A DNA stretch of 64,000 nucleotides, taken from NCBI GenBank assembly GCA_025786725.1, contig JAHLTZ010000015.1, positions 372,001 through 436,000 of the forward strand, written 5' to 3'. The notes below the pieces were generated by a model, which worked only from the letters and a program-made list of their open reading frames with translations, searched no databases and was not told the origin of the DNA. Shown piece after piece: positions 26,345-54,482 of the stretch. Position numbers and translations under genes: made by a program. The DNA comes from Syncephalis fuscata S228 (lineage: Eukaryota; Fungi; Zoopagomycota). Position 1 is the stretch's first letter, and the number at the start of each line of letters is the position of its first letter.

Positions 26345-28096
26345 TTTTATTATTTTAAAAGCAACATAAAAACTAGGATAACTTTTAAAAAATAAATGTA
26401 TTAAAAATCTTATTGTACTACACTTATAAGTTAAATTTTAATTACAATTTTTAAGGCGAAAAATAAATGTATGAATTACTAAAATAAACATATACATAAT
26501 GGAATGTACAATGACTCAGATCCTCGTCATCCAGGCGCCACCTATACAGTTCCTTCCCCCAGACTCTATTTACCCAACTAAATGTTAATAGCTGGCTCTT
26601 ACCAGTGTCATAAAAAAACTTATGCTTTAGTTTCAAGTCACTATTGATACGGGGGATCATCTTTATAAATGTGTACGCGTTCTATTTGAAATTTGATGCA
26701 CCGTTTATTGTACGCTCTTTTGGTCGATTCAGATATCTACTAAGCATACTTTAGTTTTTAAAATAAACGCTCACTTAAAGTAAAAAAATACTGTGCTTAT
26801 ATTTTTAATAATGTTATTACATTGCATTACACTAAAAACTATTTCTATATTATATCCACATCTTAATGTATAATAATATAAACATATGTTATAATTTCTA
26901 TGGATAATGTATAACACTACATTGTTATCTATATTTAATTGTCTACTGTTATACTAGTGCAGCCACTGTAACATTTAAAAAATACTATACCCGGTGCATG
27001 CACGTATCCTTAAGGTACTTATGTGCCCAAAACAATTCAGTATTAATGGCTGTTTCAAGCAAATACTAATAATGTGATTGCGAAACACGCTAAAACACCA
27101 AGAATAATGCAATTTAGAGTTGTGTTTAGCGCTGTAGCTTTTAAAATGTAATGCATGGCTATATAGTTGGATTGCTGTTTTAAATATTAGTATCGACTAT
27201 TAATATACATAAAAAGAAGCAATTTTACAACATAATATTAAAAAACTGCCAGTTTATATTACCAATCTAATGGTCCTAAGCAACAAGCATTGCATAATTC
27301 AAGTCATAGGCGGTAGTGCATTATTACATTCGTTATTAGTTTGTTATACACTTTCTTCATTGGTTGACAGATAGATGGCGCTATAGATAGGCTTGTTTTA
27401 TTTGCCATGAATATAGAAACCCCCCATTTAAACCAATAAAAAACTAGTTGATTATTTATAACTTGGCATTTTTTAATTCAAGCCCTTTCATAGCATGTGG
27501 AATACGAAAAACATCAATGATGATATAGGAATATTACATAAAATAGCCAATCAAATAATAGGGACACTTGTGAAACAGGCCTTATTTTTTGAACTGGAAG
27601 CTCTAGTGTAGTTTTAGCCCCTTATTCTAGGAAATGACAGTCATAGCATTGCATACTTTACTATTAACCAAAAGAAACATTATTATAGAATTTAGACAAA
27701 GATATTAGTATATTGAATACTTTTAAAAAGCCTAGTTGTCTTAAAAGCAGCATAAAAACTAAAATCACTATTAACGAATAAAAGCATTAATATTCAATAT
27801 TTGTTATAGATGTTATTGTATCACATATATAAGCCAAATTTAATTACAAAATTTGAAACAAGCGATACGATGCACGAGTTGCTAAAACCAAATTTCATGT
27901 TTGCTAATGTGAATAGATAGCTGTAAATAAACAGGTTTAGTTTAATTTATGAAATTCATTTATATCGGCTATATAAACCCAGATCTTCGGTATCTTTTTA
28001 AATTATTATATGCAATAGCTTCTCATCCAAGCACACTAGCAAGATCTAGACCAGTTTTTAATCATCTCTTACCACATTTAGTTGAGCTTCAGCAAA

Positions 28097-29731
28097 ATGA
28101 ATCTAGGCATTTTATCGTTAGCTTCCATTGCACTTATCGTGCTTGCATGCATATCCTCTAATGCTCAATTGGCACAGGCTATGCCCAATTATCCAACTTA
28201 TCCAGATTATGGCGACTACCCTTCAACTTATCCGGATTCTGGCGATTATCCTTTAACTTATCCAGATTCTGGCGACTATCCAACTTATCCGGATTCTGGC
28301 GACTATCCAACTTATCCAGATTATGGCGACTATCCAGTATCTTATCCTCCAGTAATCACTACTAGTGTAGAACCATATCCTCCGGTAATCACTAGTGTAA
28401 AATCATTTCCTCCGGTAATCACCACTGGTACAACCTCTTATCCTCCTGTCGCCACCACTCGCATAACTTTATATCCTCCAGTCACCACCACTCGCAAAAT
28501 CACCACTACTAGTGCAACTTCTTCCCCTCCTTTCACTACCACTCGCAGAATCACCATCACTCGTACATTCACCAACACCCGCACAGCTTCTCCTCCTCCA
28601 GTCACCACTACTAGTGTAGCTTCTCCTCCTCGCATTACCACTCGCACAATTACTAATACTCGTACATTTACCAACACCCGCACAGCTTCGCCTCCTCCAG
28701 TCACCACTACTAGTGTAACTTCTTCTCCCCCTGTCATCACTTCTATTACAACTTCTTCTCCAGTCACCACTACTAGTGTAACTTTTTCTCCTCCTCGCAT
28801 TACCACTCGCACAATCACCAACACCCGTACAATCACCAACACTCGTACATTTACCAACACCCGCACAGCTTCGCCTCCTCCAGTCACCACTACTAGTGTA
28901 ACTTCTTTTCCCCCTATCATCACTTCTATTACAACTTCTTCTCCAGTCACCACTACTAGTGTAGCTTCTTCTCCTCGCATTACCACTCGCACAATCACCA
29001 ACACCCGTACAATCACCAACACTCATACATTTACCAATACCCACACAGCTTCGCCTCCTCCAGTCACCACTACTAGTGTAACTTCTTTTCCCCCTATCAT
29101 CACTTCTATTACAACTTCTTCTCCAGTCACCACTACTAGTGTAGCTTCTTCTCCTCGCATTACCACTCGCACAATCACCAACACCCGTACAATCACCAAC
29201 ACTCATACATTTACCAATACCCACACAGCTTCGCCTCCTCCAGTCACCACTACTAGTGTAACTTCTTTTCCCCCTGTCATCACTTCTATTACAACTTCTT
29301 CTCCAGTCACCACTACTAGTGTAGCTTCTTCTCCTCGCATTACCACTCGCACAATCACCAACACCCGTACAATCACCAACACTCATACATTTACCAATAC
29401 CCACACAGCTTCGCCTCCTCCAGTCACCACTACTAGTGTAACTTCTTTTCCCCCTGTCATCACTTCTATTACAACTTCTTCTCCAGTCACCACTACTAGT
29501 GTAACTTCTTTTCCCCCTATCATCACTTCTATTACAACTTCTTTTCCTCCAGTCACCACTACTAGTGTAACTTCTTCTCCTCGCATTACCACTCGCACAA
29601 TCACCAACACCCGTACAATCACCAACACTCATACATTTACCAATACCCACACAGCTTTTCTTACTCCAGTTACCACCACTTTCATGGTTTTTGATGTCCC
29701 AGCCCCCACACACCTAGCTTTTCTTTCTTGA
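28097..29731 (+). CDS. Paralogous secreted Thr/Pro/Ser-rich repeat protein (YPDxGDY repeats, then 60-aa higher-order repeats)
   Basis: Near-identical signal peptide and MPNYPTYPDYG start to the 24769 gene; 180-bp periodicity across 28861-29460; homologous promoter region. Confidence 0.85.
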   Translation: MNLGILSLASIALIVLACISSNAQLAQAMPNYPTYPDYGDYPSTYPDSGDYPLTYPDSGDYPTYPDSGDYPTYPDYGDYPVSYPPVITTSVEPYPPVITSVKSFPPVITTGTTSYPPVATTRITLYPPVTTTRKITTTSATSSPPFTTTRRITITRTFTNTRTASPPPVTTTSVASPPRITTRTITNTRTFTNTRTASPPPVTTTSVTSSPPVITSITTSSPVTTTSVTFSPPRITTRTITNTRTITNTRTFTNTRTASPPPVTTTSVTSFPPIITSITTSSPVTTTSVASSPRITTRTITNTRTITNTHTFTNTHTASPPPVTTTSVTSFPPIITSITTSSPVTTTSVASSPRITTRTITNTRTITNTHTFTNTHTASPPPVTTTSVTSFPPVITSITTSSPVTTTSVASSPRITTRTITNTRTITNTHTFTNTHTASPPPVTTTSVTSFPPVITSITTSSPVTTTSVTSFPPIITSITTSFPPVTTTSVTSSPRITTRTITNTRTITNTHTFTNTHTAFLTPVTTTFMVFDVPAPTHLAFLS

Positions 29732-30092
29732 GTCAGCTTTTACCAAAATCAGTATTAGTAGCCAATCTCTACCAGTGGCTTATTTAAAACTTATAAGATC
29801 TAATTACCTTCTATTATTAAAATAAATGCCTTTACAATGTAAAAAATCACGTTTATTAATGTATTTTGATAATAATAATAATAATAATACCAGCATATTA
29901 AATTAAAATTATTTCTACATTGTATTCGTATATTAATGTAAATCTTATACTACACGCATAAACGTTTAACGAATCATTATTCGACACAGAAAATAATTAT
30001 GTAAAAAAATTATGTAAATATTTCCCACGATTACTTTAATTTAATTTCCGAAAAGCTTGTAAATGTTACACAAATCCTTTTTGGTTTTATTG

Positions 30093-30944
30093 TACTTTGA
30101 CTCCCATATCTGGAGTCCCCAAAATAGCAAATCTTTTTACGCAATCAATTGTAATGCTTTGGATAGCTGAATTACGTTTAAAGCATTATTCACAATAAAT
30201 ATTAGCGTAGTATAATAACATTATCATTTCCATAGAATAGAATTGATTAGATGTAACAGAACATTGTATTAGTAATAATTTTAAGCATTTAAATAAACAA
30301 TGCAACATACTATTTGATTTTTTTGAAACATTTGAGACTAATTATTGTCGTTTGCCATGCGCAGAAAGATTGATCGAATATTAATAAAAGCCATTGATCG
30401 CAATTCCATGTCGTTCCGCATTTGTTGTTATTGCATCTACATACAGCATGGATTCTTGCGCTTAAATGGTCTCTTTTATTTTACAATATGCTACTATTGC
30501 ATTTTGGGCATATTTGCAATGTAAAATACTTATCTATGGTGGCAAAAAATTAGAACGACTAGCGTTTCTGACGCTTACAATTCTCTTGAGAATTATTGGT
30601 ATCAAATTGGTAGGCGCAGTCTCTTTGCTAACCATTGATGAAGCAAATGGCCTTCACCATATGCAATAATGATAGGTTGAGTGTCTTTACCAGAAAGATC
30701 TTGTGGCGACAGTTGTAACCAGATGATACGGCATGCCGTTGAGGTTACTTGAAAAGATATTAGTGTAAAATAAGAGAAATAAAGACTAGGGATTGATTAA
30801 TATTTTTTATTGATATTCAAATACGCATGTTATTTGTATGTTATATTTAGCATTATTGTGTAATATATTACTGAATAGAACAATAAGATAGTAATAAGAA
30901 AAAAATAGTGAAATGAGTCAATAAAGAATGTGGAAGTCAAAGTA
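30093..30944 (-). mobile_element. Non-autonomous inverted-repeat element with TA flanks, carrying a Fanzor remnant
   Basis: TGTACTTTGACTCCCATAT (30091-30109) matches the reverse complement of 30928-30946, TGTACTTTGACTTCCACAT, at 17/19. TA sits just outside CTTTGAC at both ends. Confidence 0.6.
30338..30710 (-). pseudogene. Fanzor/TnpB-like nuclease C-terminal remnant (RuvC-II, zinc finger, RuvC-III)
   Basis: Reading across frameshifts: PIIIAYGEG/FASSM...APT...L/TIDKYFTLQICPKC...*...RIHAVCRCNNNKCGTTWNCD/MAFINIRSIFL. Compare the family pattern IAYG..DEY.TS..C..C...C....C...WNRD..A..NI. Confidence 0.8.
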
Positions 30945-30983
30945 CAGTAGCTCCCCTTTTTAACAAAATATTATTTTAGAAGC

Positions 30984-32106
30984 TATTTTACTTTGAGGTT
31001 CTATCCTTAAACTTAACGACAGAAAAATTAATAATTCGAATAATAAACCGCCGATCAGTTTTTACTACTGAAAAGTGCTATTTGTTGAAGCGTGTCATAT
31101 CAACTCCGATTGAATTAATCAGTTTTGATTAATTTGCACTATTTTCAATATTTGATATAGTGTTAATAAATGTTAAATAGTATTTCATGTCACTTACAAT
31201 AGAATATAATAAATAGATAAATGTTAATATATGTTATTGTTGCTGTAAAGTATTCAAAGCAGTATAATTGATATCTAATGTCACTCACCATCAGTTCCGT
31301 GTTTAGTAGAATAACAAATGTGTAGCTCAATCAAGTAAAAAATGTCAATTTTGATCTTTTGACACTAAATCACATGAGTCTACCAATAAAGTATTTAATA
31401 TATGGAAGTTATTATACGTTGACTCCTACGTTTTTTATTTACGCATTTCACTCCTTTTCTTTAAATACAATTAAACACTTATTCGTCACTATAACATGTA
31501 TAATATTGTATCCAACATTAATTGAGTCATGTGTAATTATCAATACAATAGTGTAATTAATTAGTTATATTTATTATTGCTTTAATATATATATATATAA
31601 TGTCATTATAATACTAATTGTTCAAAATGTCATTTATTTAGTTAGATTGGCTATAGGAAAGTGGTTGTTTAATAAACGACTTTATAATAATTATATTAAT
31701 ATTGATGTTACAGCACAAGTATGCCCAAAATGCGATAGTAGCATATTGTAAAATAAAAGAGACCATTTAAGCGCAAGAATCCATGCTGTATGTAGATGCA
31801 ATAACAACAAATGCGGAACGACATGGAATTGCGATCAATGGCTTTTATTAATATTCGATCAATCTTTCTGCGCATGGCAAACGACAATAATTAGCCTCAA
31901 ATGTTTCAAAAAAATCAAATAGTATGTTGCATTGTTTATTTAAATGCTTAAAATTATTACTAATACAATGTTCTGTTACATCTAATCAATTCTATTCTAT
32001 GGAAATGATAATGTTATTATACTACGCTAATATTTATTGTGAATAATGCTTTAAACGTAATTCAGCTATCCAAAGCATTACAATTGATTGCGTAAAAAGA
32101 TTTGCT
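30984..32106 (+). mobile_element. Second Fanzor-derived element copy (zinc finger/RuvC-III remnant plus 3' region), opposite orientation
   Basis: 31713-32106 is the near-perfect reverse complement of about 30126-30515 (TAQVCPKC...WNCD). 30984-32045 recurs inverted at 40718-41778. Confidence 0.8.
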
Positions 32107-40708: not shown

Positions 40709-41778
40709 TTTAAATCATATTCACAATAAATATTAGCGTAGTATAATAACATTATCATTTCCATAGAATAGAATTGATTAGATGTAACAGAACATTGTAT
40801 TAGTAATAATTTTAAGCATTTAAATAAACAATGCAACATACTATTTGATTTTTTTGAAACATTTGAGACTAATTATTGTCGTTGGCCATGTGCAGAAAGA
40901 TTGATCGAATATTAATAAAAGCCATTGATCGCAATTCCATGTCGTTCCGCATTTGTTGTTATTGCATCTACATACAGCATGGATTCTTGCGCTTAAATGG
41001 TCTCTTTTATTTTACAATATGCTACTATTGCATTTTGGGCATATTGTGCTGTAACATCAATATTAATATAATTATTATAAAGTCGTTTATTAAACAACCA
41101 CTTTCCTATAGCCAATCTAACTAAATAAATGACATTTTGAACAATTAGTATTATAATGACATTATATATATATATATTAAAGCAATAATAAATATAACTA
41201 ATTAATTACACTATTGTATTGATAATTACACATGACTCAATTAATGTTGGATACAATATTATACATGTTATAGTGACGAATAAGTGTTTAATTGTATTTA
41301 AAGAAAAGGAGTGAAATGCGTAAATAAAAAACGTAGGAGTCAACGTATAATAACTTCCATATATTAAATACTTTATTGGTAGACTCATGTGATTTAGTGT
41401 CAAAAGATCAAAATTGACATTTTTTACTTGATTGAGCTACACATTTGTTATTCTACTAAACACGGAACTGATGGTGAGTGACATTAGATATCAATTATAC
41501 TGCTTTGAATACTTTACAGCAACAATAACATATATTAACATTTATCTATTTATTATATTCTATTGTAAGTGACATGAAATACTATTTAACATTTATTAAC
41601 ACTATATCAAATATTGAAAATAGTGCAAATTAATCAAAACTGATTAATTCAATCGGAGTTGATATGACACGCTTCAACAAATAGCACTTTTCAGTAGTAA
41701 AAACTGATCGGCGGTTTATTATTCGAATTATTAATTTTTCTGTCGTTAAGTTTAAGGATAGAGCCTCAAAGTAAAATA
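40709..41778 (-). mobile_element. Third Fanzor-derived element copy, inverted duplicate of 30984-32045
   Basis: About 1.06 kb of near identity; the same 65-aa incidental ORF is called at 31359(+) and 41403(-). Confidence 0.85.
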
Positions 41779-41993: not shown

Positions 41994-43527
41994 TTAGTGC
42001 ATCCATGACTTTTCCGTTGGCACAGTCCACTTTGTAGTGACCTTCTTGCGTAGCGTAAAGAATTCGACACCACCATCGCCTGTAATATCCATATCACCGA
42101 AACTACTGGCATTGATGCCGCCAAACGAGAATGGCTCACGTGGCACAGGTACACCAATATTCACACCCATCATACCGGCTGAAAAGCGTTTAGTAAACCA
42201 TTCAGCAACAGCACCGCTGCTTGTATAGATACAGGCAGCATTGCCATATGGATTGGCATTTTCAATTTCAATTGCTTCGCTCGCCGATTGACAAACATAG
42301 ATCGAAATGACTGGGCCAAAGATTTCGTCGTGAAGTGCACGATCTTTAGGCGATTTGTGCAGAATTACAGTTGGTCCAACCCAGCTGCCTGTGCGACTGG
42401 CCCAGCCACGTCCATCAACAAGGATCTGTGCACCTGTCTTTTCGGCTTCATCGATATAGCCGATGATACGGTCGCGTGATAATGGGTCAATAACTGGACC
42501 CACTTGACGAGGTCCAGTACCTGGTTGGAGAGAACTAGCCTTAGCACAAATACGTTCAAGTAGCTCAGGTTGTTCGCCAACAAGCAATAGTACCGATGCG
42601 GCCATACAGCGCTGACCAGCACAGCCAGAGAATGAATTGACAACATCCTGTGCTGTCATTTCAAGATCACAATCTGGCACGGCAACCAAATGGTTCTTTG
42701 CGCCGCCCAAAGCCAAACAGCGCTTGCCCAATGTTCGGCATTGGCGTGATACGATGTCTGCAACGGCTGTCGTGCCGACAAAAGTCACTGCTTTTACTTT
42801 GGGATGCTCGATAAGAAGCTGCGCTGTATCTTTATCGCCATTAACCAAGTTGATAACACCAGGAGGAAAGATTTTCGAGGCAATACATGCAACGCGGTTA
42901 AGTGTAAGTGGTACTTTTTCCGATGGCTTTAAAACTACAAATAATAATAAATCAACTACTATTATTACTATTGCTATTACTACTTACCAATAGTATTGCC
43001 ACATCCAACAGCAATGGGCAGTGTCCACATAGGCACCATGATAGGAAAGTTAAATGGTACAATCGATACGACAACACCTACAGCATCGCGTCGCTCTTGG
43101 CATTGAACACCGCGACTGACTTCGGCCGCGCGACCAGCAGCCACCTGTGGCAAACCAATAGCATACTCAACAGTCTCGATGCCTTTACGTACGCTGCCAA
43201 TAGCCTCGTCCTTTGTCTTGCCATGTTCTTTCACGACCAGCTCAGCAAGTTCGTCCTCATGAGCAATCAGCGCTTGATGAAAACGAATAGTATACTGGGC
43301 GCGATCCTTGAAGGTACGGTTGCTCCATGGGATGAAGGCATCAGACGCTGACTTCACAGCCGCGTCAACCTCGGCCTTCGTAGACAAAGGCACTTGAGTT
43401 ATAACATCGCCAGTATGTGGTGTTGTAACATCCAAATAACGCTTCTTTTCATCATCAATAGAGCTATCGAGCGGTACAAACTGATTGTTATAAAAGTTGG
43501 AAGTTGTTGAGGAATGTCGGCCGTCAT
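41994..43527 (-). CDS. Methylmalonate-semialdehyde dehydrogenase (ALDH6 family); one intron; apparent 1-nt frameshift near the start
   Basis: PFNFPIMVPMW, LGGAKNH, GCAGQRCMA, EIFGPV, GVNIGVPVP. ATG 43527 is one base out of frame with SNFYNNQFV. Confidence 0.9.
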
Positions 43528-44689
43528 TTTGTTATGGCGTTGAAAGCAGTAGTAAAGTGATAGTATTGTAGTAGAATAATGAGCAAAGATACAGGAACGA
43601 TAAAACGAAGAAGAGCGAAAGGCGTACGTATGCAGAAGACTTGACCCTGACGTACATGTCTTGTCACGTGATCGTGTCAGTGAGAAATGTGAGTTTTATT
43701 GATTGGATACTAAATGTATATGGAGATAAACAAACAAATTACCAATGTTGTTCTAATATAGCTGTATTTTATCTCTGTTAATTTATATAAAATAAAATCA
43801 ATGAATCTTTTATAAAACAAGATTTATTTTGAATTTTAAAAATGATAACTTTGAGAATAATTATAATTTTAAGATTGTATTGCAATGCTACCATAAAATC
43901 ATAGATTGGTGAGAATGTGTCAAAATTTTAACATTGATATCAACCCACGATTCCGTAATTCGGCTTTGACGTATTTTGGTTTAAGTTATTGCTGATTTTG
44001 ATGCATAAATTTATAATAAGCCATTATAATTATGCTAAATAAATTATTATTAATTAAGCTATGCTAAACAAGTAATTCTTGCATCAGATCACCACTGCTT
44101 TGTATGTTATAAACCATCTCTATACATTCAGAATCAACTAAATGATTTGATAAATAAATTTAGTGTCTTTACATTACTTCATAATCAATTGCCAAATTAA
44201 TACTCAAGTCCAATGCTTCATTATTGGGAATATCACTATGGAACAGCCAATAATTAATAACAGGAATTGACTGATGGCGGTAAGGCTTGTATTAATGATT
44301 GGTAGCACAGGGCTAGAAATAAACCGGTAATTCTTGTAGTTAAGCTGCAATGGCAAGTAGAATGATCACGTGAACCAATCAATATATTGCATGATTTAAT
44401 CATTGTAACTGGCTTATGCACAACAGTGTAAGCATGCAAAGAAACTCAATTTATTAATGTTGCTTTTGTATATGTGTTGTGCAGTTTGAAAGAATAATAA
44501 ATGGCTTTTATTTACCGGCTATTAATAAACCTTGTAGTCATCTATAAAATGAAGAGAATGCAGTTTGGTGTCAAAACAGACCTAATTCCATAAAAAGATT
44601 ATATCGGGGTTTGTTCAAAGGCAATGCACTATCTTACGAGTTATGCGCAGCTTGAAAGGATGTAGATATTGGGGATTAAAATGTTTTGG

Positions 44690-45739
44690 TGAAGACAACA
44701 GTAAAAGCACAAAGATGCATCGTCATTGCCTTCGTAGAACCCATAAATTTAGTCTGCGTTGTATGGTTGAATCATGCACAGCATAGTAAAGAATAGTACA
44801 CGGATTTCTACCATAGATGTACCGAATAATTGAAATTGCCGCGTTCTTTGTTCAAATGACAAACAGGTTGAATTAAAAATACAGCAACGGGCCTCATCAT
44901 TTTCGTAGAACCAATGAATTCTGTTTGCGTCATATGGTCGAGCTGGGGATTAATTTTTCGGTGAAAGCAATAACAAAACACAAAGACGTACCATCATTGC
45001 TTTCGTAGAACCAATGGACTCGGTTTGTGTTGCATGGTCAAATCATGCACAGCACAGTAACAACTAGCATGTGGATTTTTTACCATAAATTTATTGGATG
45101 ATTGAGATTGCCGCGTTCTTTGTTCAAAAACCAAACAGGTTGAATTAAAAATACGGCAATGGGCCTCATTCTTTTTGTAGAACCAATGGATTTAGTTTGT
45201 GTCATATGGTCGAGCTGGGGATTGATTTTTTGGTGAAGGCAATAACAAAGCACAAAGACGTATCATCACTGCTTCTGTAGGACCCATAGATTTAGCCTGC
45301 GTTGCAACCCATAAATTCAGTTTGGGTTGCATGGTCAAATCATGCACAGACAGTAAAGAATAGTACACGGATTTCTACCATAGATGTACCGGATGATTGA
45401 GATTGCCGCGTTCTTTGTTCAAATGACAAACAGGTTGAATTAAAAATACGGCAATGGGCCTCATTCTTTTTGTAGAACCAATGGATTTAGTTTGTGTCAT
45501 ATGGTCGAGCTGGGGATTGATTTTTGGTGAAAGCAATAACAAAGCACAAAGGCATATCATCACTGCTTCTGTAGGACCCATAGATTTAGCCTGCGTTGCA
45601 ACCCATAGATTTAGCCTGCGTTGCATGGTCAAGTCATGCACAGTACAGTAAAGGCAAGTACACGGATTTCTACCATAGATGTACCGGATGATTGAGATTG
45701 CCGCGTTCTTTGTTCAAATGACAAACAGGTTGAATTAAA
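44690..45739. repeat. Tandem repeat, about 4 units of 270-295 bp with internal sub-repeats
   Basis: Anchor attgccgcgttctttgttcaaa recurs near 44835, 45107, 45402 and 45697. Confidence 0.9.
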
Positions 45740-46104
45740 GGCTTGGTTGCACATTAGCATGTCATTAGTACATTGATATACGCATACTTCAAATCATCAT
45801 GTGAATACCTTTGAAGACTACCGTTGCATGTATAGAATGCACACTACAGCTATTCATCCATGCCTGCTAAATCGTCATATTAATGTATTTTATTGGTTTA
45901 CACTGTATTCAATGGTATATTCAATAGAATACACTGCTGGTGCTTCACAATAAATTTAATATAAATAGCCCACAAAATACACACAACTAACTAGCAGTAT
46001 CATCATCACATTCTGCTTTCTGCCAAATACTCACTCTACCTACTTTGCACCAAACATACTCTGTCGTTCACTCTACTTGTTTGTCTTAACAAATCAATCT
46101 CACC

Positions 46105-47469
46105 ATGAAGCTTTCTATTGCCGTCGTCTGCACCGTCTCGTGGCCCTTGTAGCCAGTACAGCCATGGTGGATGCTAAGCCAACTTTGGTTCGTCGTGGTA
46201 TGTTGTAGTCATAATAAATTTGATATGTTTACTAACACTATGTTCAACCAACGATGGTATTAGCTGGTAAGTTGTGATTAGGGATCATTGTTCCAGTGCT
46301 TACCGTATGTTATACAAATAATGGACATGGCAAATAGTTGGTAAGTGTTGATTGCACATAGTTATTGGCACAATAATTAATTGTTGTTTTTAATGTAAAA
46401 TAAATAAAATAGCACCATTGGCTAAAAGTAGGTTTAATATAAAACAAAATTATATTGCTGATACTAATATTGCCTATCTATACTAATAGGAGGTAAATAG
46501 CAATAAGAATAACTAATTAATTATGCACTAAATATATATCGCACATTTTGTATTTAATAACTTGTATTAATAGCTCGTAAGTGACATTGTACATTTATTA
46601 ATTATACACTAAATATATACTGTGCACTTTGGTGTTTGATAACTCGTATTAATAGTTGGTAAGTGGTATTGTATACCAATTAACTACGCACTAAACATAT
46701 ATCATTAATCGTGTATGGTTGGTGACTGTATTAATAGATCGTAAGTGGTATTGTATATTAATTGACTATACATTAAACATATACCATACATTTTGTATTT
46801 GATGAATTGTATCAATAGGCCGTAAGTAGTATTGTATACTAATTGACTATACACTAAATATATACCGTGCACTTTATGTGTTTAATGACTTGTATTAATA
46901 GGTGGTAAGTAGTATTGTATATTAATTGACTATGCACTAAATATATACCGTACATTTTGTATTTGATCCCTTGTATTAATAGGCCGTAAGTAGTATTGTA
47001 TACTAATTGATTATACACTAAATATATACCGTGCCTTTTGTATTTGATCCTTTGTATTGATAGCTCGTAAGTGGTACTATATTAATTAACTATAGGCTAA
47101 TTATATACCGTACATTTTGTATTTGATCCCTTGTATTGATAGGCCGTAAGTAGTATTGTATATTGGTTGACTATACACTAAATATATACCATGCACTTTA
47201 TGTGTTTAATGACTTGTATTAATAGCTGGTAGGTGGTATTGTATATTAATTGACTATGCACTAAACATATACCGCACATTTTGTATTTAATAACTTGTAT
47301 TAACAGCTAGTAAGTGCTATTATATATTAATTGTCTATGCGCTAAATATATACCGTGCACTTTGTGTGTTTGATGACTTGTATTAATAGCCAGTAAGTAG
47401 AGTTATATAATGTTAACTTATACGCTAATCGCATAATATTTTATATATGTATCGGCACTGATAGTATAA
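46105..47469 (+). CDS. Micro-exon gene (17 exons, 14 of 3 nt) encoding a 51-aa secreted precursor with Kex2-type dibasic sites
   Basis: Exon 1 46105-46197. Then CTG 46264, TTG 46338, 15 nt 46413-46427, GAG 46490, CTC 46574, TTG 46656, ATC 46738, GCC 46819, GTG 46902, GCC 46983, CTC 47064, GCC 47143, CTG 47226, CTA 47307, CCA 47390, and TATAA 47465. Each internal exon is flanked by YAG and GTA(A/G). Splices to ...VDAKPTLVRRAVAPLAKRALDRRGPRPATI*. The signal peptide needs one base restored near 46135. Confidence 0.85.
46490..47398 (+). repeat. Tandem array of about 11 intron+micro-exon units, period 79-84 bp
   Basis: Consensus gtaagtRgtattgtata...cactaaatatataccg...ttgtattaatag-NNN. Confidence 0.92.
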
Positions 47470-49469
47470 TTGGACTGCAAGTTATATATATTTTAGGTAT
47501 ATATTCGGCAAGAATCAAGATCATTTGACAACTACGCCATTCAGTCCATTCATATATCAAGTTCCATCCAATGCCCCGGTTTATTCAACCCTTAATCGAT
47601 GGACTCCTTATATTGCCAACATGTTTCTATTTTTCTGTACATGCTCAGCTATGCAGACTTAGTAATAAACATATGGTTTCATTTTAATTATGTTTGATTA
47701 AGCTATTATAGCTGTGTTTATATTCTATTTGCTTACAAAGACTAACATTAATTGATTAAATATATTGACAATAAACTTGTACAAATGCGCTATGTTAGTG
47801 AACAATGTAAACTAAAGTAATTGTAATAGCATTATTATTCAAATAGCAATTAGTATGTAGTCATTATTACTGAATAAAGTCGTCATTTGATTAACACAAA
47901 ACCACTACTAAATTACTGCTTATTCACGAACGATATAGATTGTATATAACAGCGTTACTATATCATTTGACTTGAATGTATGCAATGTTGTGAAATAGAT
48001 ACTGTATCATTGAACATTGTATAATTGGCACTTTTATGCTATTGGCTATAATGTTATTCAATTTAGCTAGTTAAACAATTGTATATTAAATGGACTGAGT
48101 GTGCGTACTAGTCAATGATACTGCTAGAGACAAAGGATATTAAGTGGAAAGGAAGCAAGATGGATGAAAATGAACAGTGAATGTCATTGGAATGAATGAA
48201 CAACGCAAGTAGTCGAATATCACTAATCAATATGCTGTAATTAAGTATAAGAAAACGAAATATTACATTGTAACTTTAATAACACTTTTACTTTTGTAAA
48301 TAAATTCTACTGAAATGCAAATGTTAATAATTAAAACAATTTTATATTATTTATCAGCTCAAATAAAAAGTAGACAAATGACTTGTAGGCTTGTATTGCT
48401 ACTATAAAACTCATGATATATTGTGTAAGAACATAGAAAACTGCTACAATGAAATGCAAATAGCCATTTTAGCTGCACATGACTAGTTGTTTGTTCATTT
48501 TTGAATTCAATAGGTTTTATTATGCTTTATACCTCAATAAGCTAATTATTTATTTACCAGCAGAATTAAAACAACATGGCTTTATCAACAATTTACAACA
48601 TCGGACCTAGACAACCATATATAATTCTACAATTATCCAGTACGTAATAAACAGATATTTTTATACATACTCGATTTACTTCATAATGATATTGAATTGC
48701 TATAGATGAATCTATCTTATACATGCTTATTCTATTACTTTGCACGTACTTTATGAATAGATACAATTATCATATTAATCCGATCTATCCCAGCCACTAT
48801 GATAGTATTGTATATCTTTGTTGATATCATTAACAAAATACTAGCAGTATCAGTTATATGTTGACATAAAAGCACTACTACCATATAACAACTCATGGAT
48901 CCTGATAATGACTAGTCTATTCATACAATACTTTTATTTCTCTAATTCTTTATTCATTTCCCTCCCTTGTATATTCATTCTATTATATATCGTTCTATCC
49001 TGTACTGACCACACTCTATTTAAAACTACGTTTGTATAATTCTAGCCTTATTTGCTATAAACTTTGACTCATGTCGCTCATTGAGCCATATAAATTATAG
49101 CTTCTTTTATTCATTCATTCCGTTCTATGCTATCCTATGCCTCACCAACTATTAATTATTAATAAAGGCTGTTTCTTTGTCATTAGTCATATTCTTTGTA
49201 GAATTCAACATGGTCCACTTAAATATAGTATACTTTATTATTAATAGCTATACTTTCTTTAATTATTCGCTTAACTATATATTGTTTTATTTTTCGCAAA
49301 ATAAAATGTGAGTCTCTAATAATGATTATAAAGCATACCATAAATAAATATCAAACACAATCTATTTAATTATACAAATTATAAAAAAAGAATACAACAA
49401 CAAAGTTTAATAAAGGCGTCTTTTTCCATATTAACGATAGTTCTACACGTCAGGATAAACCATCTTCTA

Positions 49470-52400
49470 ATGACCGAACAGCGTTGGCCCGATAGTAATC
49501 CTCCATTCCACGTCGGTATCATTGTTGATACGTCGATAGACGACGAGAAACGATACCGTCGGTCTCTTTCACTACTGGCTCGTCTTGAAAGTTCGGGAAA
49601 ACCGCCCGAGCCAGAGGAATTAACCGAGTTTGCCGAAGCATTGCAAGTGGTTAAAGACACAGCAAAGCGGGGCAAGATTATTACTGAAGATGTTATACCA
49701 CTCTGTGTTTGGTGGTTATCGTTAGACTCAGTCGCACTATGGTGGCTATCGATATTTGAACAAGAAGCGGAAAGTTTAACGGCTGTTGGTAAGTTAATGG
49801 AACCAAATATGTATTTAGTATATTAAGTATAATCGATAGCGTTAAAGAAGGGATTTATTCATTTACAAAGCCTTATTACTGAACTTGCCGATACTAGTTT
49901 ATCTGAGATTGCTATTACAGCTATTCGCTGTGCTCACAAACTAGTACCGCACGCCTTTCTACGCTGGTAAGTTATTACAATACATATTGATGTTATAGTT
50001 ATTTATGTATTTATATTTAGTTGTGTGGCAGATGATGATGACGGCAAACTATGGCATATTGTACATCAAGTCTATGAGTCAGTTAAATTACGTGTACGTT
50101 CTCGGAACCCACAGATGCAACTTGTAGCCATACGGTTTATTACACTATTTGCACAAATATTTACACAGCGACTTACAAATCCTAGAGTAAGTCGAGTGTT
50201 GCATTAACAATAATAATAATACAAATTAACTATTGATGAATCAATATTAAAGATGCGTCGCTATCCACATGATGTATCAATTGCTCTTTACAAAGGTGGT
50301 AATCAAGGATTTAAAACGGCCAAGTGTGAACAATATGCAGAAACGATATTAGATGAATTACTGGCATTTATATGTGATCCTGGCGTGTAAGTATAGTCGA
50401 TGAGTAGCTATAGATGACAATTATCTTATTATTGATTATTAGTACTTATCCAACGGGTATTATTAATTGTGTATTTATCTATGCACGTTCACGTTGGAAA
50501 CATGCTGTTGCGGCAATTGAAAGTCTTTTACATATCTGTAAAAATATGCCCATTCACTGGTCTACAATGCAGCGTCGATGTGTTAGAAGAACAATTCTGG
50601 CAGGATTTAGCACGTTATTTCGGTATGGATCATAAAGTATTCAATATATACCTAATCACTTACATTGCCCTATTTAGATATGCAGTTTCAAGATCCGATA
50701 GAAAAACACGAGACTTTATATTAAAAGCGATTGAGGAGATTGAGGAGACAGCTCTTGTAAAAACACTTATACTATGGGAGGAAGGCAAACGACGTGGGCA
50801 CGCCTATCCAAGTACGTATAATATGAATAGATAACTTTTCTTTAATGTTTATATACACCATTGAACAGGCTCGAATGAAGCAACTACCGCTGAAATGACA
50901 TTAAACGGCGATTCTATTACGAGTAAAAATGAACGAATAGGTATTGGATCACGATCAGGCCGAGTAAACGCCACGGGGAATAATCGAGCCTTTGGTAATC
51001 GTGAGCCAAGTAACCTGATATTTGTAAATAAGCGAGATCCTCGACGTAAAGATGGCCGATTCTACGGTCGCTTGCATGTAGTCGATCCTTTTAAACAAAA
51101 GGGAAAAAGAAAGAAGCCTAAAGATAAAAAGGCAACGCTTGATGAAGATACGCTTAAACCATCTGAATCTAGCAATTCTATAGCTGAATCAATTCCCGAA
51201 ACACCCAGACCAATCATTGGCATGTCCTATGATCATTGCATTTTATTTATGAAGAGTACTATTGATCGGATTCTATATGGCCGACTTGTATCACTAATTG
51301 TGCCATCACATCTCAATTGGCGGGTGGCACTTGATCGATGCGCTGCCTTTCTCATAAGCCGAGGCGAAGAAAGTGACGAGGCACTAGCTTTGGTGAACAA
51401 CGAGGAGGATCTTGATATAGCACGTACCCATCTGGCTCAGTTTTTTGCTAGTGGATTTAATGATTGGTAGGTTGATTAGTAATCAATAATAGCTATTGAT
51501 ATATCAATGCTTTATATTTAGGCACCAGCATGCTTTATACTGGCTATATCTAGAGTGGTATGAAGATAAAGAGGTAATTGCTAGAGAGAGAGAGAGAGCT
51601 GACTATTAAGTGTTAATAAGCTATGAATTAACTAGGCTTATAATCAATCATTATGCCTGCAATTAAAACTATTGTTTGAAAATGAGACATTCTCAGAAAT
51701 TGTTGTTGGACAATTTATTCTAGGTATTCCAGAACTAACTAATGATGCTGGATATTTACTGCAAACATTCTGTAATAATATAAATTGGTAGGATTGTATT
51801 AGGTAACATTAAGTGTATTAATTAGAGCTATTAAATAGGTGTTATATGATATTGCAATGTCTACGCCGATGGTCATTAACTCAAGGAAACTCAATGTCGG
51901 TAGCATTCCGTCAGTTTTGGATACTTAGTATACAGCAAGGTAAAATTACATATTAAATTATGTTTATTATGCAGCATAACCAATTAATATTCTACACAGA
52001 TACTGATGAAATCCGGTTTGATGTCAATCGTGAGATTACACGTTGTATAGAGCGTAATCCACGTGCTATAATAGAAGCAAAACAGTTAGCTGAACTTGGT
52101 CTAAAAGCCATGACCAACAATGAAAATAGCATATTAATTGACTGGATAAAAGAATTAGAAAATAGATCAGAAAAGACAATGTTATTTGCTGAATCAAATG
52201 ATGAGCAAAAGCTAGATATAAAGGATAATAGAGAAGATAGAGAACAGAAGATGGTAAAACACTTTTTAGATATTATATTTCGTACTATGACACGGCGAGT
52301 CAATATTATTACACCGTATGTAATGAACACCTTTCCTACGATTTACACTGATCACTATACAATTTAATATCATTAGACTACTTCAGCACTATGCAAACTA

Positions 52401-53510
52401 TTCAATACGAACACAAATGGCCATTAAGGCCGGTATTATAGAAACAGTATTAGAGATTGGTCAATCGTGTACAGAATTAATATCGACTCTTTGTGAAGCG
52501 CCAAAAGATGCCAATGACTTGGTAGCATGGATTATTCGACTATTTGTTTCGGATGGTAAGTGCTAGAGGGTGAATACTAATGTTATTGGGCATTAAGTAT
52601 TTATTATAATTATAACTAATAGGTCGTCCGAGTCAAGAGTTGCGTAATGCTATTCTTGATATGGAAGCAAGAGAAGTCGAAGGGGCAGCCATTATCTCCT
52701 GGATGTTAGTAACGGCAGTTGATCATGTAAGATTTATTTGATACAATGAAATGAATAAAATACTTGAATCTAATGAATCTGATCATAGCATCACATTGAA
52801 TCAGCCGTATTAAAAGTACTAGGTGCAGCTAATAGTATGGATCAACTGCCTAGTATGATACATTCTATGATATTTTGGCTTGAGCGAGATTTAAATATTA
52901 AATCAAGTGATTTATTTTTAATGACTATTAAGAATACTTCTCGACAGAATGCAAAGCGAATTGGCAAAGGTAATTTTTAAACAAAATTGAGTAATTAATC
53001 AATTAATTAGTTATTATTATTATCAGTGATTGATCAATTTATTCTTATGTCTGATATATTTGATCGAAGTGTTATTCAAAATTCTCTAACCCGAGCTTAT
53101 AATATTCGGCAACCACCTGTGCTATTAATGCGTGCCGTAAGTATAACAATAGCATTTGATTACATTATTTATTCATTTAATTAATATTTTATTTTAGACT
53201 ATGCAGATTATGCGTGCCTATCCAGAAATGCTTGATGTTTCCCTTGATTTAATGGATTCACTTATCCAACGACCAGTTTGGGAAGTACCACAATTTGAAT
53301 CAGGCTTTATTAGATTTGTTAAAGTAAGTGATGATTTACTTATAATGGTTGTATTAACTCTAATACAATACAATACAATATAATACTTAGATGTGTCAAC
53401 CACGATCATTAAAATTGCTAAAAAGATTATCAATTAGCCGTAGAAATAGATTGCTTGAAGAACACTCTGACCTGAAAACTGCTTATTTGTTTAATGAACG
53501 TCTCTCATAA
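49470..53510 (+). CDS. Divergent symplekin/Pta1-like protein, many introns
   Basis: C-terminal PVLLMRA/TMQIMRAYPEM...LIQRPVWEVPQFESGFIRFVK/MCQPRS resembles the symplekin C-domain; HEAT-like N-terminal exons; consistent GT-AG junctions. Confidence 0.6.
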
Positions 53511-53713
53511 CTATATATATACGCACATACACATACATAATTCTAATGGATCGGCATTGAAGCATTAATAAATACCATAGCATGACGTCATTAGCTAAAA
53601 CAAGCACAGTGTAACTTAAAGTGGTGTCTTATCTATTTGGCTTTTCTCCGTCCTTCGTATTTGCCAGTCTCTTTATTTTACGCTCTCTTCACTTATCTGT
53701 ATTACTGTCTACC

Positions 53714-54482
53714 ATGGAATCACGTACCGTTGTAGTTGCTTTAAATGACTCACCCGTTACACTCTACGCTCTAAATTGGGCTCTTTCTCATGTGTTTCGT
53801 GTCTCAGATGACACTTTACAATTGCTTCATGTTGTCAAATTACCTGAAGAGCAGTCAGAAAATAGCGATTACTGCATTATAGGTACCTATTTCAGTGCTA
53901 TTAGTATTTTATATTCTATTAAGAGTATATAGTGCTGCTGTTGTCAATGATGCTAATAATACAAATGAATAGCAACACCTAGGCCACCAGCCGCATCAAA
54001 GCGTACCTCGCTACAACGATCCACTGTCCAAGGCTATGAGATCATTCAACGTGGCGAGTCTGTCGTTAAAGCAGCATTTCCAGACACCACTGTAAGTATT
54101 GTATAAGTACCTTTTTCTTTTACTATATCATTATTATAGATCAACTATAAAACGGAAATTGTTTACAATAATAGTATAGTCAATGGAATATTGGATTTTG
54201 TTCACAATCCACAGCAGACATCAATTCTTGTACTAGGGAAAAAGGAACTACCGTATGTATATGAGTGAGACGCAGCTATTAGAGGTCAGCTAATGAAATA
54301 GGCTAATGAATAGACACGATACACAGTCATCATTTACACAACAACAAAATACAATCAAGTTTTGTGTTCATAATGCGCACTGTCCAGGTAAATAATTCAT
54401 TTGATACTTAAACTATACAAAGTAATAATTTTCGTTTTTACTATTCTTCATAGTTGTTGTAGTACGCGAGCAAAAGAAATAA
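53714..54482 (+). CDS. Universal stress protein (USP) family, multi-exon
   Basis: MESRTVVVALNDSPVTLYALNWAL...LQLLHVV; C-terminus FCVHNAHCP/VVVVR. Confidence 0.8.

What the first reader, a model, noticed from the sequence alone, without database searches (positions are those of the whole stretch)
46264..47392. Architecture permits a combinatorial peptide library: all exons phase 1-1, and no skip can create a stop
Seen: all 15 internal exons are multiples of 3 and in phase 1, so each codon is the last base of one exon plus the first two bases of the next. The last bases are only G, C or A, never T, so no junction codon can be a stop. Skipping both shortens and recodes the product: omitting GCC 46983 gives ARPATI, CTC 47064 gives GRPATI, GCC 47143 gives GPPATI, CTG 47226 gives GPRPTI. 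Skipping GAG 46490, GCC 46819 or GTG 46902 removes a dibasic site. The theoretical space is 2^15 splice patterns. Inference: one locus may release a mixture of peptides for signalling or host interaction.
Basis: partly seen in the sequence, partly recalled or inferred. Interest (0 to 1): 0.85.

Follow-up and report, generated by a model that had tools for sequence, protein, structure and literature searches.

The report
One-codon exons in fungal peptide gene
A tiny secreted-peptide gene of the fungus-parasitising fungus Syncephalis fuscata appears to encode its variable part one codon per exon, in a tandem row of fourteen 3-base exons. This architecture has so far been reported only for truffle immune-receptor genes; nothing here shows that the exons are alternatively spliced, and this copy carries a frameshift.

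Summary
The architecture is real. After a first exon ending in phase 1 come fourteen 3-nt exons and one 15-nt exon, each flanked by YAG|…|GTRRRT. No exon ends in T, and none of the 32,768 skip patterns gives a stop.

The window is Syncephalis fuscata (Zoopagomycota). A paralogue 95 kb away on the same scaffold has the same build with 16 three-nt exons.

Several results argue for true exons rather than a neutral minisatellite:
- The three exon columns are the least conserved of 89, while splice signals are about 0.9–1.0.
- There is no AG between branch site and acceptor.
- Codon usage favours phase 1.
- The product reads as a Kex2-type prepropeptide (…RR/AVAPLAKR/ALDRR/GPRPATI).

- "Never T" fails in the paralogue.
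- Skipping GTG 46902 keeps the RR pair.
- This copy has a 1-nt gap in its signal-peptide exon.

[quoted passage not shown] The new parts are the phylum and the gene class. No transcript data could be reached, so the combinatorial library remains untested. Both copies lie on a 3.65-kb segment absent from the syntenic sites of two sister species.

The parts
44199..47852 (+). 3.65-kb duplicated segment carrying upstream 272-295-nt repeats and the whole gene
   Evidence: blastn to L001 8408-12302 at 82-89% identity; the edges of homology are seen; the segment is absent at the syntenic sites in L124 and L125
45960..45968 (+). TATA-like box (TATAAATAG)
   Evidence: identical in the paralogue, about 140 nt upstream of the ATG
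46105..46197 (+). exon 1: signal peptide plus pro-segment ending Arg-Arg, donor in phase 1
   Evidence: matches P0001 residues 1-31; identical to the paralogue except for one gap
46137..46138 (+). site of the 1-nt gap relative to the paralogue (frameshift; premature TAG at 46150-46152)
   Evidence: alignment A2 column 198; frames
46198..46263 (+). intron 1, 66 nt
   Evidence: GTATGT, TACTAAC, TAG; the same intron is used by the JGI model of the paralogue
46264..46266 (+). 3-nt exon CTG
   Evidence: tag|CTG|gtaagt; junction codon GCT Ala; ATG in the paralogue
46338..46340 (+). 3-nt exon TTG
   Evidence: tag|TTG|gtaagt; junction codon GTT Val; ATG in the paralogue
46413..46427 (+). 15-nt exon
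   Evidence: tag|15 nt|gtaggt; reads A-P-L-A-K in phase 1; one difference from the paralogue
46490..46492 (+). 3-nt exon GAG
   Evidence: donor gtaaat; junction AGA completes Lys-Arg; triplicated in the paralogue
46574..46576 (+). 3-nt exon CTC
   Evidence: junction GCT Ala
46656..46658 (+). 3-nt exon TTG
   Evidence: junction CTT Leu
46738..46740 (+). 3-nt exon ATC
   Evidence: junction GAT Asp
46819..46821 (+). 3-nt exon GCC
   Evidence: junction CGC, first Arg of the RR pair
46902..46904 (+). 3-nt exon GTG
   Evidence: junction CGT, second Arg; skipping it keeps RR
46983..46985 (+). 3-nt exon GCC
   Evidence: junction GGC Gly
47064..47066 (+). 3-nt exon CTC
   Evidence: junction CCT Pro
47143..47145 (+). 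3-nt exon GCC
   Evidence: junction CGC Arg
47226..47228 (+). 3-nt exon CTG
   Evidence: donor gtaggt; junction CCT Pro
47307..47309 (+). 3-nt exon CTA
   Evidence: acceptor cag; junction GCT Ala
47390..47392 (+). 3-nt exon CCA
   Evidence: junction ACC Thr
46493..47389 (+). eleven tandem introns of 76-81 nt (the 81-nt unit is intron plus one codon)
   Evidence: TRF periods 81, 164 and 324; GTAAGT, CACTAAA and TAG conserved; branch site 42-44 nt from the acceptor with no AG between
47393..47464 (+). last intron (first AG after the branch site)
   Evidence: gtaagt ... cgctaat ... gatag; an alternative acceptor ends at 47496
47465..47469 (+). start of the last exon: TA completes Ile, then TAA stop
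   Evidence: with the alternative acceptor (exon from 47497) the frame runs on to TGA 47526-47528
47664..47669 (+). AATAAA, likely polyadenylation signal
   Evidence: conserved in the paralogue

Best explanation
This is a genuine, very small protein-coding gene of Syncephalis fuscata, and its variable part is encoded one codon per exon.

Gene structure. Exon 1 encodes a signal peptide and a pro-segment ending Arg-Arg. It is followed by 15 symmetric phase 1-1 exons (fourteen of 3 nt and one of 15 nt). A last exon supplies two bases and a stop. Each 3-nt exon sits in a tandem unit of intron plus codon, about 81 nt long, with near-consensus signals: GTAAGT, a CACTAAA branch 42-44 nt from the acceptor, no AG between them, and YAG.

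Splicing (inferred). Short fungal introns are recognised across the intron. Each unit can therefore be removed on its own, leaving three bases behind.

Product (conceptual). The message reads ...LVRR/AVAPLAKR/ALDRR/GPRPATI. That is a Kex2-type prepropeptide whose released peptides are spelled by the microexons.

What the array does (inferred from the comparisons). It acts mainly as an evolvability device. Unequal recombination between near-identical introns adds, removes or reshuffles single codons without ever breaking the frame. The triplets themselves change to saturation. Exon skipping may add variety at the transcript level, as published for truffle nank genes, but it is not shown here.

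Status of this copy. It has a 1-nt gap in exon 1 relative to the intact paralogue. It is therefore either a recently disabled copy or an assembly error.

Shown: the anatomy, the paralogue, the conservation pattern, the lineage-specific location, and the existence of the same architecture elsewhere.
Inferred: splicing-in of the triplets, secretion, Kex2 cleavage, and any role toward the host.
For: - Anatomy.
- Organism and paralogue: GOGAT is 100% identical to an S. fuscata protein on the 571,950-bp contig. Exon 1 hits P0001, and its locus L001 has the same build with 16 three-nt exons.
- Conservation: in 23 aligned units, the exon columns have pair identities of 0.28, 0.46 and 0.28, ranking 1st, 6th and 1st of 89 columns. 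The intron mean is 0.80. The lowest 3-column window is exactly the exon, at 0.34, and the next lowest that does not overlap it is 0.53.
- AG exclusion: 1 AG in 942 nt between branch site and acceptor, against 15 in 592 nt upstream of the branch.
- Spacing: the AG-to-GT distance is always 3, while intron lengths vary from 76 to 81 nt.
- Codon usage against the GOGAT gene: phase 1 scores 22.8 bits with 11 of 11 codons ending in C or T, against 13.2 and -3.4 bits for the other phases. In the paralogue the scores are 6.2, -2.1 and -16.9.
- Paralogue comparison: exon 1 is identical apart from the gap, introns 1-2 have clearly more differences than exon 1 and the 5' UTR (about 12-15% by my count of alignment A2), and the first seven post-exon-1 codons carry three non-synonymous differences. 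Three identical GAG units with 96%-identical introns show unit duplication.
- The class is real. A metagenome scan recovered a PNP_UDP-NACHT-ANK gene followed by at least 29 such exons, the published Tuber architecture. It also recovered kinase genes whose flanking exons and arrays are all in phase 1, with 1 stop observed against 21 expected. Exon identity is below flank identity in 67 of 70 arrays.
Against: - No transcript, cDNA or peptide evidence could be reached for S. fuscata.
- This copy has no gene model and a frameshifted exon 1.
- The JGI model of the paralogue reads through the first microexon.
- Only two family members are known, both on a young duplicated segment absent from sister species. 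That also fits a repeat-borne, non-functional sequence.
- Tandem copies inherit splice signals, so counts are not independent.
- Among Syncephalis unit pairs with both flanks close, there are only 5 pairs: exon divergence 0.20 against flank divergence 0.07, not significant.
- Zero substitutions in exon 1, including at synonymous sites, may reflect gene conversion rather than selection.
- The last acceptor is ambiguous (47464 or 47496).
Confidence: 0.65

Rival explanations
1. The main function of the array is to produce a combinatorial mixture of secreted peptides from one locus, by stochastic or regulated skipping of codon-sized exons.
For: - All exons are symmetric, and all 32,768 skip patterns are stop-free in this copy, giving 17,493 distinct peptides.
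- Some skips remove dibasic sites.
- A few units have weaker signals (gtaaat at 46493, gtaggt at 47229, cag acceptor at 47304) and could be skipped more easily.
Against: - There is no transcript evidence.
- The intact paralogue has four T-ending exons and eight stop-making skip junctions, so stop-proofing is not a conserved design feature.
- Near-identical consensus signals, an AG-free branch-to-acceptor zone and unstructured introns point to efficient inclusion.
- Frame-specific stop depletion in related arrays means the triplets are usually translated in their genomic order.
- Exon skipping is generally rare in fungi (my own background knowledge).
- This copy has a broken signal-peptide exon.
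Confidence: 0.25
2. The window copy is a dead duplicate. Only the paralogue at L001 (or other unseen copies) is functional, and the array here is decaying neutrally.
For: - A 1-nt gap in exon 1 gives a stop after 15 codons.
- No gene is called here in the public annotation.
- The copy lies in a lineage-specific 5.9-kb insert at a rearranged site.
Against: - All 15 internal exons still have intact AG and GT.
- There is no stop in phase 1.
- The promoter, 5' UTR and exon 1 are otherwise identical or nearly so to the paralogue.
- A single-base gap may be an assembly error, and an in-frame ATG at 46164 remains.
Confidence: 0.35
3. The repeat is an ordinary minisatellite inside one long intron, or inside non-coding DNA. 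Its copies merely inherited splice-like motifs from a duplicated intron end, and the triplets never reach a mature mRNA.
For: - It is a tandem repeat with 79% matches and higher-order periods.
- A direct exon 1-to-last-exon splice would also keep the frame.
- Some hits of the same pattern elsewhere are unrelated repeats, including CRISPR arrays.
Against: - A neutral repeat should vary evenly. Here variation is concentrated in exactly the three bases between an invariant AG and GT.
- AG is excluded downstream of the branch site.
- The AG-to-GT spacing is fixed at 3 despite intron indels.
- Codon usage and the dibasic sites fit phase 1.
- Analogous arrays elsewhere are in frame with their flanking coding exons and depleted of stops.
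Confidence: 0.1
4. The conserved 80-nt units are the functional part: intron-encoded small RNAs such as snoRNAs or mirtron-like hairpins in a non-coding host gene. That would explain conserved introns with unconstrained tiny exons.
For: The pattern of conserved introns with variable exons is also the signature of snoRNA host genes (my own background knowledge).
Against: - No Rfam family matches with meaningful score in 44500-48000; the two matches under E = 1 fall far below their gathering scores and lie upstream of the gene.
- Five units fold worse than their shuffles, z +0.6 to +2.1.
- The best-conserved columns are the splice signals, not C/D or H/ACA boxes.
- The units are too short to hold a snoRNA plus splice signals.
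Confidence: 0.03

Closest known systems
[quoted passage not shown] 2012, Fungal Biol 116:261; known to me only through citing papers)
   Same: Both have tandem 3-bp exons, each with its own splice sites, in a fast-evolving fungal gene. Alternative splicing is the reported source of diversity. My scan recovered this architecture in L019: PNP_UDP-NACHT-ANK followed by at least 29 microexons.
   Different: - The phylum differs: Ascomycota there, Zoopagomycota here.
- The gene class differs: a large intracellular NLR there, a roughly 50-residue secreted prepropeptide here.
- L019 reads in phase 0 and this locus in phase 1.
- Splicing is untested here.
Schistosome micro-exon genes (MEGs) (PMC4350168; DeMarco et al. 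2010 from my own background knowledge)
   Same: Both have a signal-peptide exon followed by many symmetric micro-exons. Both encode a secreted product at a parasite-host interface. In MEGs, variation comes from exon skipping.
   Different: - MEG exons are 6-36 nt and are not tandem copies of one intron-plus-exon unit.
- MEGs are animal genes with exon-definition splicing.
- There is no homology.
Fungal Kex2-processed secreted peptide precursors (alpha-factor-like, KEP proteins; my own background knowledge)
   Same: Both have a signal peptide, a pro-region, and dibasic KR/RR sites that frame short peptides.
   Different: - Known precursors carry repeated copies of one peptide in ordinary exons.
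- Here the peptides are unrelated to each other and are encoded by 3-nt exons.
- Cleavage is not shown.
Isolated 1-3-nt exons in fungal genes (Coprinopsis cinerea long-read annotation, PMC12230235)
   Same: It shows that fungal spliceosomes include 3-nt exons: 27 such exons in 26 genes.
   Different: Those are single conserved exons in ordinary genes, not tandem arrays of duplicated units.
Introner-like elements and introns born from tandem arrays (van der Burgt et al. 2012; Zhuo et al. 2007; my own background knowledge)
   Same: Both involve many near-identical introns created by duplication.
   Different: - Introner-like elements are dispersed among unrelated genes. No copy of this unit occurs outside the two arrays in about 94 kb of S. 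fuscata DNA.
- The human tandem-array introns are not separated by codon-sized coding exons.

Membership tests
Codon-sized microexon arrays (Tuber nank type) | Tandem series of 3-nt exons, each bounded by canonical acceptor and donor | tested here: met
   14 exons with YAG|NNN|GTRRRT; 16 in the paralogue
Codon-sized microexon arrays (Tuber nank type) | Array embedded in a NACHT-ankyrin NLR gene | tested here: not met
   The gene has only a signal-peptide exon and a 2-nt terminal coding exon. The neighbouring genes are aldehyde dehydrogenase and symplekin.
Codon-sized microexon arrays (Tuber nank type) | Alternative inclusion of the microexons seen in cDNA | not testable with these tools
   No S. 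fuscata transcript-derived sequences are in the collections.
Codon-sized microexon arrays (Tuber nank type) | Sequence homology of units or flanking exons | tested here: inconclusive
   blastn of the locus against the 120 metagenome loci, including NACHT-ANK-type L019, gave no meaningful hit. No Tuber sequence itself could be compared, so homology to the published family remains untested.
Schistosome micro-exon genes | Signal-peptide exon plus a run of symmetric micro-exons of 6-36 nt | tested here: not met
   Symmetry and a signal peptide are present (in the paralogue), but 14 of 15 exons are 3 nt, and they are tandem duplicates.
Kex2-processed fungal peptide precursors | N-terminal signal peptide | tested here: inconclusive
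   It is intact in the paralogue (P0001 residues 1-24, judged by eye; no predictor was run) and frameshifted in this copy.
Kex2-processed fungal peptide precursors | Several dibasic sites separating repeated copies of a peptide | tested here: not met
   There are three dibasic sites (RR, KR, RR), but the segments between them are unrelated. The paralogue has two sites.
Introner-like elements | Near-identical introns dispersed in unrelated genes | tested here: not met
   Only 12-16-nt chance matches occur outside the two arrays in the window, L001 and L122.
Intron-encoded small-RNA host gene | Known RNA family or stable hairpin within each unit | tested here: not met
   Rfam found nothing meaningful: two matches under E = 1, both far below their gathering scores and upstream of the gene. 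Fold z-scores are +0.6 to +2.1.

The most novel reading that the evidence does not exclude
Codon-sized exon arrays may be a general fungal device for making hypervariable protein segments. They would have arisen independently in at least three lineages and three gene classes: a secreted prepropeptide in Zoopagomycota, kinase genes in Glomeromycotina-like fungi, and NLRs in truffle-like Ascomycota. In Syncephalis the functional copy would release a splicing-generated mixture of short peptides toward its fungal host.
Probability: 0.2. Interest if true: 0.85.

Novelty: new variant of a known kind. Interest (0 to 1): 0.62.

Why it matters
If the triplets are spliced in, this locus does three things.
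- It extends the truffle "codon-sized microexon" phenomenon to an early-diverging phylum and to a secreted peptide.
- It gives a compact 1.4-kb natural substrate for asking how a spliceosome handles fourteen consecutive 3-nt exons.
- It shows a way to evolve peptides by adding, deleting and swapping single codons through intron recombination without frameshifts.

It also exposes a blind spot in annotation. Gene callers mis-model or miss such genes: the paralogue's public model reads into an intron, and this copy, which also has a frameshifted exon 1, has no model at all. The metagenome scan suggests that many more exist in fungal genomes.

Tried and rejected
- Exact look-ups of three window ORFs found nothing.
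- The organism came from the GOGAT search instead.
- A search of 1.84 billion representatives with the kinase exon of L102 gave family members. None carried microexon-encoded residues, so it gave no direct proof of splicing.
- The Rhizophagus irregularis locus of the best named hit has no array.
- Arrays made only of GGA, with variable "introns", looked like purifying selection on exons. They are CRISPR arrays next to cas2 and were removed.
- Rfam and hairpin tests were negative.
- No dispersed copies of the unit were found.
- The metagenome loci share no sequence homology with this locus.
- A possible degenerate upstream array (repeat D7) is a chance match.
- No terminal inverted repeats or target duplications were evident at the ends of the 3.65-kb segment.
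- Syntenic sites in S. plumigaleata and S. pseudoplumigaleata hold no orthologue.
- The primary paper, Iotti et al. 2012, is not held.
- My first reading of a long C-terminal tail after the gatag acceptor was a miscount. The frame stops after one codon.
Full report
WHAT THE WINDOW IS. The window is fungal, not human. It carries a fused NADH-glutamate synthase, a DEAD-box helicase and an LRR protein. The glutamate synthase is 100% identical to a Syncephalis fuscata protein on a 571,950-bp contig. The coordinates of that gene place the window at GCA_025786725.1 JAHLTZ010000015.1, where record position equals window position plus 372,000. S. fuscata belongs to Zoopagales, Zoopagomycota. From my own background knowledge, the genus consists of obligate haustorial parasites of Mucorales and Mortierellales.

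THE OBSERVATION. The described anatomy is there.
- Exon 1 (46105-46197) ends ...CGT CGT G.
- Intron 1 (46198-46263) has GTATGT, a perfect TACTAAC branch and TAG.
- Fourteen 3-nt exons and one 15-nt exon (46413-46427) follow, each bounded by YAG and GTRRRT.
- In order, the triplets are CTG TTG [15 nt] GAG CTC TTG ATC GCC GTG GCC CTC GCC CTG CTA CCA.
- No exon ends in T.
- No pairwise junction is a stop. None of the 2^15 skip patterns contains a stop, and they give 17,493 distinct peptides.
- One claim is wrong: skipping GTG 46902 keeps the Arg-Arg pair, whereas skipping ATC 46738 removes it.

The motif count is 15 against 2.7 expected, and the triple motif occurs 6 times against 0 expected. These counts are far above chance. 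Because the units are tandem copies (TRF period 81, 10.9 copies, 79% matches, with higher-order periods of 164 and 324), the counts alone do not show function.

The frame that defines phase 1 is broken in this copy. The ATG at 46105 runs into TAG 46150-46152. The frame that joins the microexons opens only downstream, with an in-frame ATG at 46164.

Searching exon 1 by reference found one protein, P0001. It is a 50-residue S. fuscata gene model whose first 31 residues are a typical signal peptide plus ...LVRR. Its locus, L001, lies on the same scaffold about 95 kb away, in the opposite orientation. L001 is a paralogue, because only L001 8408-12302 matches window 44196-47845, at 82-89% identity.

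L001 has an intact exon 1. The window lacks one base between 46137 and 46138. The public model of L001 uses intron 1 in phase 1 and then reads through the first microexon into the next intron. The window copy has no model at all.

ARE THE TRIPLETS REAL EXONS? Five independent signatures say yes.
1. Conservation. In an alignment of 23 units from both loci, the three exon columns have pair identities of 0.28, 0.46 and 0.28, ranking 1st, 6th and 1st of 89 columns. Intron columns average 0.80, and GTAAGT, CACTAAAT and TATTAATAG are about 0.9-1.0. The lowest 3-column window is exactly the exon, at 0.34; the next lowest that does not overlap it is 0.53.
2. Branch-site geometry. The branch site lies 42-44 nt from the acceptor, and that zone holds 1 AG in 942 nt against 15 in 592 nt upstream. 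This is a classical AG-exclusion zone.
3. Spacing. The AG-to-GT distance is always 3 although intron lengths vary from 76 to 81 nt.
4. Codon usage. Scored against the glutamate synthase gene, phase 1 gets 22.8 bits, with 11 of 11 codons ending in C or T, against 13.2 and -3.4 bits for the other phases. In L001 the scores are 6.2, -2.1 and -16.9.
5. Structure. The units fold worse than their shuffles (z +0.6 to +2.1), and no Rfam family matches with a meaningful score in the locus. This suits efficiently spliced introns and argues against small-RNA precursors.

One caveat applies. Among Syncephalis unit pairs whose two flanks are both close, there are only five. Their exon divergence of 0.20 against a flank divergence of 0.07 is not significant.

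THE PRODUCT. I read the junction codons one by one in scripts, for description only. The window copy would give ...LVRR / AVAPLAKR / ALDRR / GPRPATI. The stop comes from the first AG after the last branch site: the exon starts at 47465 with TA and is followed by TAA. An alternative acceptor ending at 47496 would add a ten-residue tail.

L001 gives ...LVRR / DDAPLVKR / a 14-residue Gly/Phe-rich peptide.

Both read as a signal peptide, a pro-region and dibasic Kex2-type sites. The peptides after the conserved Lys-Arg differ completely between the copies. Secretion and cleavage are inferred, not shown.

EVOLUTION. Between the paralogues, the promoter, 5' UTR and exon 1 are almost identical; exon 1 has no substitution. 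Introns 1-2 carry clearly more differences (about 12-15% by my count of alignment A2). The first two microexons and the 15-nt exon carry three non-synonymous differences in seven codons. The arrays are 78-82% identical. The 3' part is 89% identical.

L001 holds three identical GAG units with 96%-identical introns, which shows growth by unit duplication. It also has a roughly 340-nt insertion in one intron.

Four L001 exons end in T, and eight skip junctions there would be stops. Stop-proofing is therefore not a family rule.

Both copies sit on a 3.65-kb segment (window 44199-47852) inside lineage-specific intergenic DNA.
- At the window site, aldehyde dehydrogenase and symplekin are 5.9 kb apart. 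In S. plumigaleata they are 180 nt apart.
- At L001, the adh_short and GT22 genes are 5.5 kb apart. In S. pseudoplumigaleata they are 121 nt apart.
- The segment has no match in either sister locus.

The family is therefore young and has been copied or moved. That is typical of effector-like genes, but it is also compatible with repeat-borne DNA.

THE WIDER CLASS. I scanned the metagenome collection for three ATAG-NNN-GTAAGT sites 60-85 nt apart.

Some hits are unrelated. Invariant repeats are one kind. Four cyanobacterial CRISPR arrays are another, because their repeat happens to contain the motif.

Most of the rest share the signature seen here. Exon identity is below flank identity in 67 of 70 arrays. 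Unit pairs whose flanks differ by 2.8% differ by 40% in the triplet.

Stops are depleted in a frame-specific way.
- In AT-rich contigs, phase 1 has 1 observed against 21 expected, and phase 2 has 50 against 51.
- In the other contigs, phase 0 has 7 against 18.

Three gene contexts were identified.
- L019 is a PNP_UDP-NACHT-ankyrin gene followed by at least 29 microexons.
- L120 has an array between ankyrin exons, with the donor, the acceptor and the stop-free reading all in phase 0.
- A set of AT-rich contigs places arrays between a short first exon and kinase exons. The donors and acceptors I checked are in phase 1: the upstream exons of L101 and the kinase-exon acceptor in 6-7 of 9 contigs. 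The best named relative of the kinase is from Rhizophagus irregularis.

None of these loci is homologous to the Syncephalis locus.

WHAT IS KNOWN. Searches for tandem 3-nt exons found nothing at first. One review sentence then led to Iotti et al. 2012. [quoted passage not shown] Four papers cite this. The primary paper is not held.

The kind is therefore known, and L019 acts as a positive control for my scan. The new elements are the phylum, the gene class (a prepropeptide of about 50 residues), phase 1-1, and possibly the kinase context.

Isolated 3-nt exons are documented in Coprinopsis. Schistosome micro-exon genes are the nearest animal analogue.

HOW IT MOST LIKELY WORKS. Short fungal introns are defined across the intron. 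Perfect GTAAGT donors pair with U1 through intron positions, so the three exon bases are free to vary (established knowledge of splicing; inferred for this locus). Each unit is removed and leaves one codon's worth of sequence.

The architecture lets unequal recombination between near-identical introns add, delete or reorder codons in frame. Unit number (14 against 16), unit order and triplet identity all differ between copies that are nearly identical elsewhere.

Skipping may add transcript-level variety, as reported in Tuber. Uniform strong signals, and the stop depletion seen in the class, suggest that inclusion is the rule.

LIMITS.
- Exon 1 was searched. The 3-nt exons are too short to search.
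- I left out any search with the joined sequence.
- I put no base at the frameshift.
- No transcript data for S. fuscata were reachable.

VERDICT. The locus is best seen as a new variant of the codon-sized-microexon architecture, in a young, duplicated, probably secreted-peptide gene. This particular copy may be disabled.

Noticed in passing
window 44704-45739: Tandem repeats of 272-295 nt (2.4-3.2 copies, 80-92% matches) lie directly upstream of the gene's promoter. They are shared with the paralogue (L001 about 8880-9630) and are part of the duplicated 3.65-kb segment. Their role is unknown.
   Followed up: partly
L002, L006, L096, L099, L101, L102, L112, L115 and about 30 other AT-rich metagenome contigs: These are Glomeromycotina-like kinase genes whose N-terminal region seems to be encoded by 7-30 consecutive 3-nt exons, all in phase 1. 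The conceptual peptides are rich in Trp, Asp, Asn and Tyr. I found no report of this.
   Followed up: partly
L019 5340-7818 (also L082, L116, L120): A PNP_UDP-NACHT-ankyrin gene is followed by at least 29 codon-sized exons. Arrays also lie next to RelA_SpoT-type and ankyrin exons. These look like environmental relatives of the published truffle nank genes.
   Followed up: partly
L003, L023 6881-9209, L046, L117: These are CRISPR arrays whose 37-nt repeat contains ATAGGGAGTAAGT, with cas2 adjacent in L023. They are false positives of the splice-site pattern and mimic 'invariant exons with variable introns'.
   Followed up: yes
L001 11240-11580: A roughly 340-nt insertion with a G-run lies inside one array intron of the paralogue and stretches that intron to about 420 nt.
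   Followed up: no
window 41994-43527 versus 49463-53885: The aldehyde dehydrogenase gene is inverted relative to symplekin when compared with S. plumigaleata. The microexon gene therefore sits at a rearrangement breakpoint.
   Followed up: partly
window 30287-31945 and 40818-41357; L001 7847-8240: A dispersed repeat family (about 82% identity) lies in AT-rich islands (GC about 0.28) of the window and next to the paralogue's segment.
   Followed up: no
window 28001-30000: There is a strong GC skew (-0.57) with long open frames on both strands (549 aa on plus, 414 aa on minus) and no Pfam match for the plus-strand frame. It looks like a compositionally biased repeat gene.
   Followed up: no
L020, L025, L030, L040, L055, L068, L074, L087 (one soil sample, Ga0210392): These contigs consist almost entirely of 80-nt units with variable triplets, up to 32 per contig. 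They are stop-free in phase 0 and rich in Tyr, Asp and Gly. The gene context is unknown.
   Followed up: no
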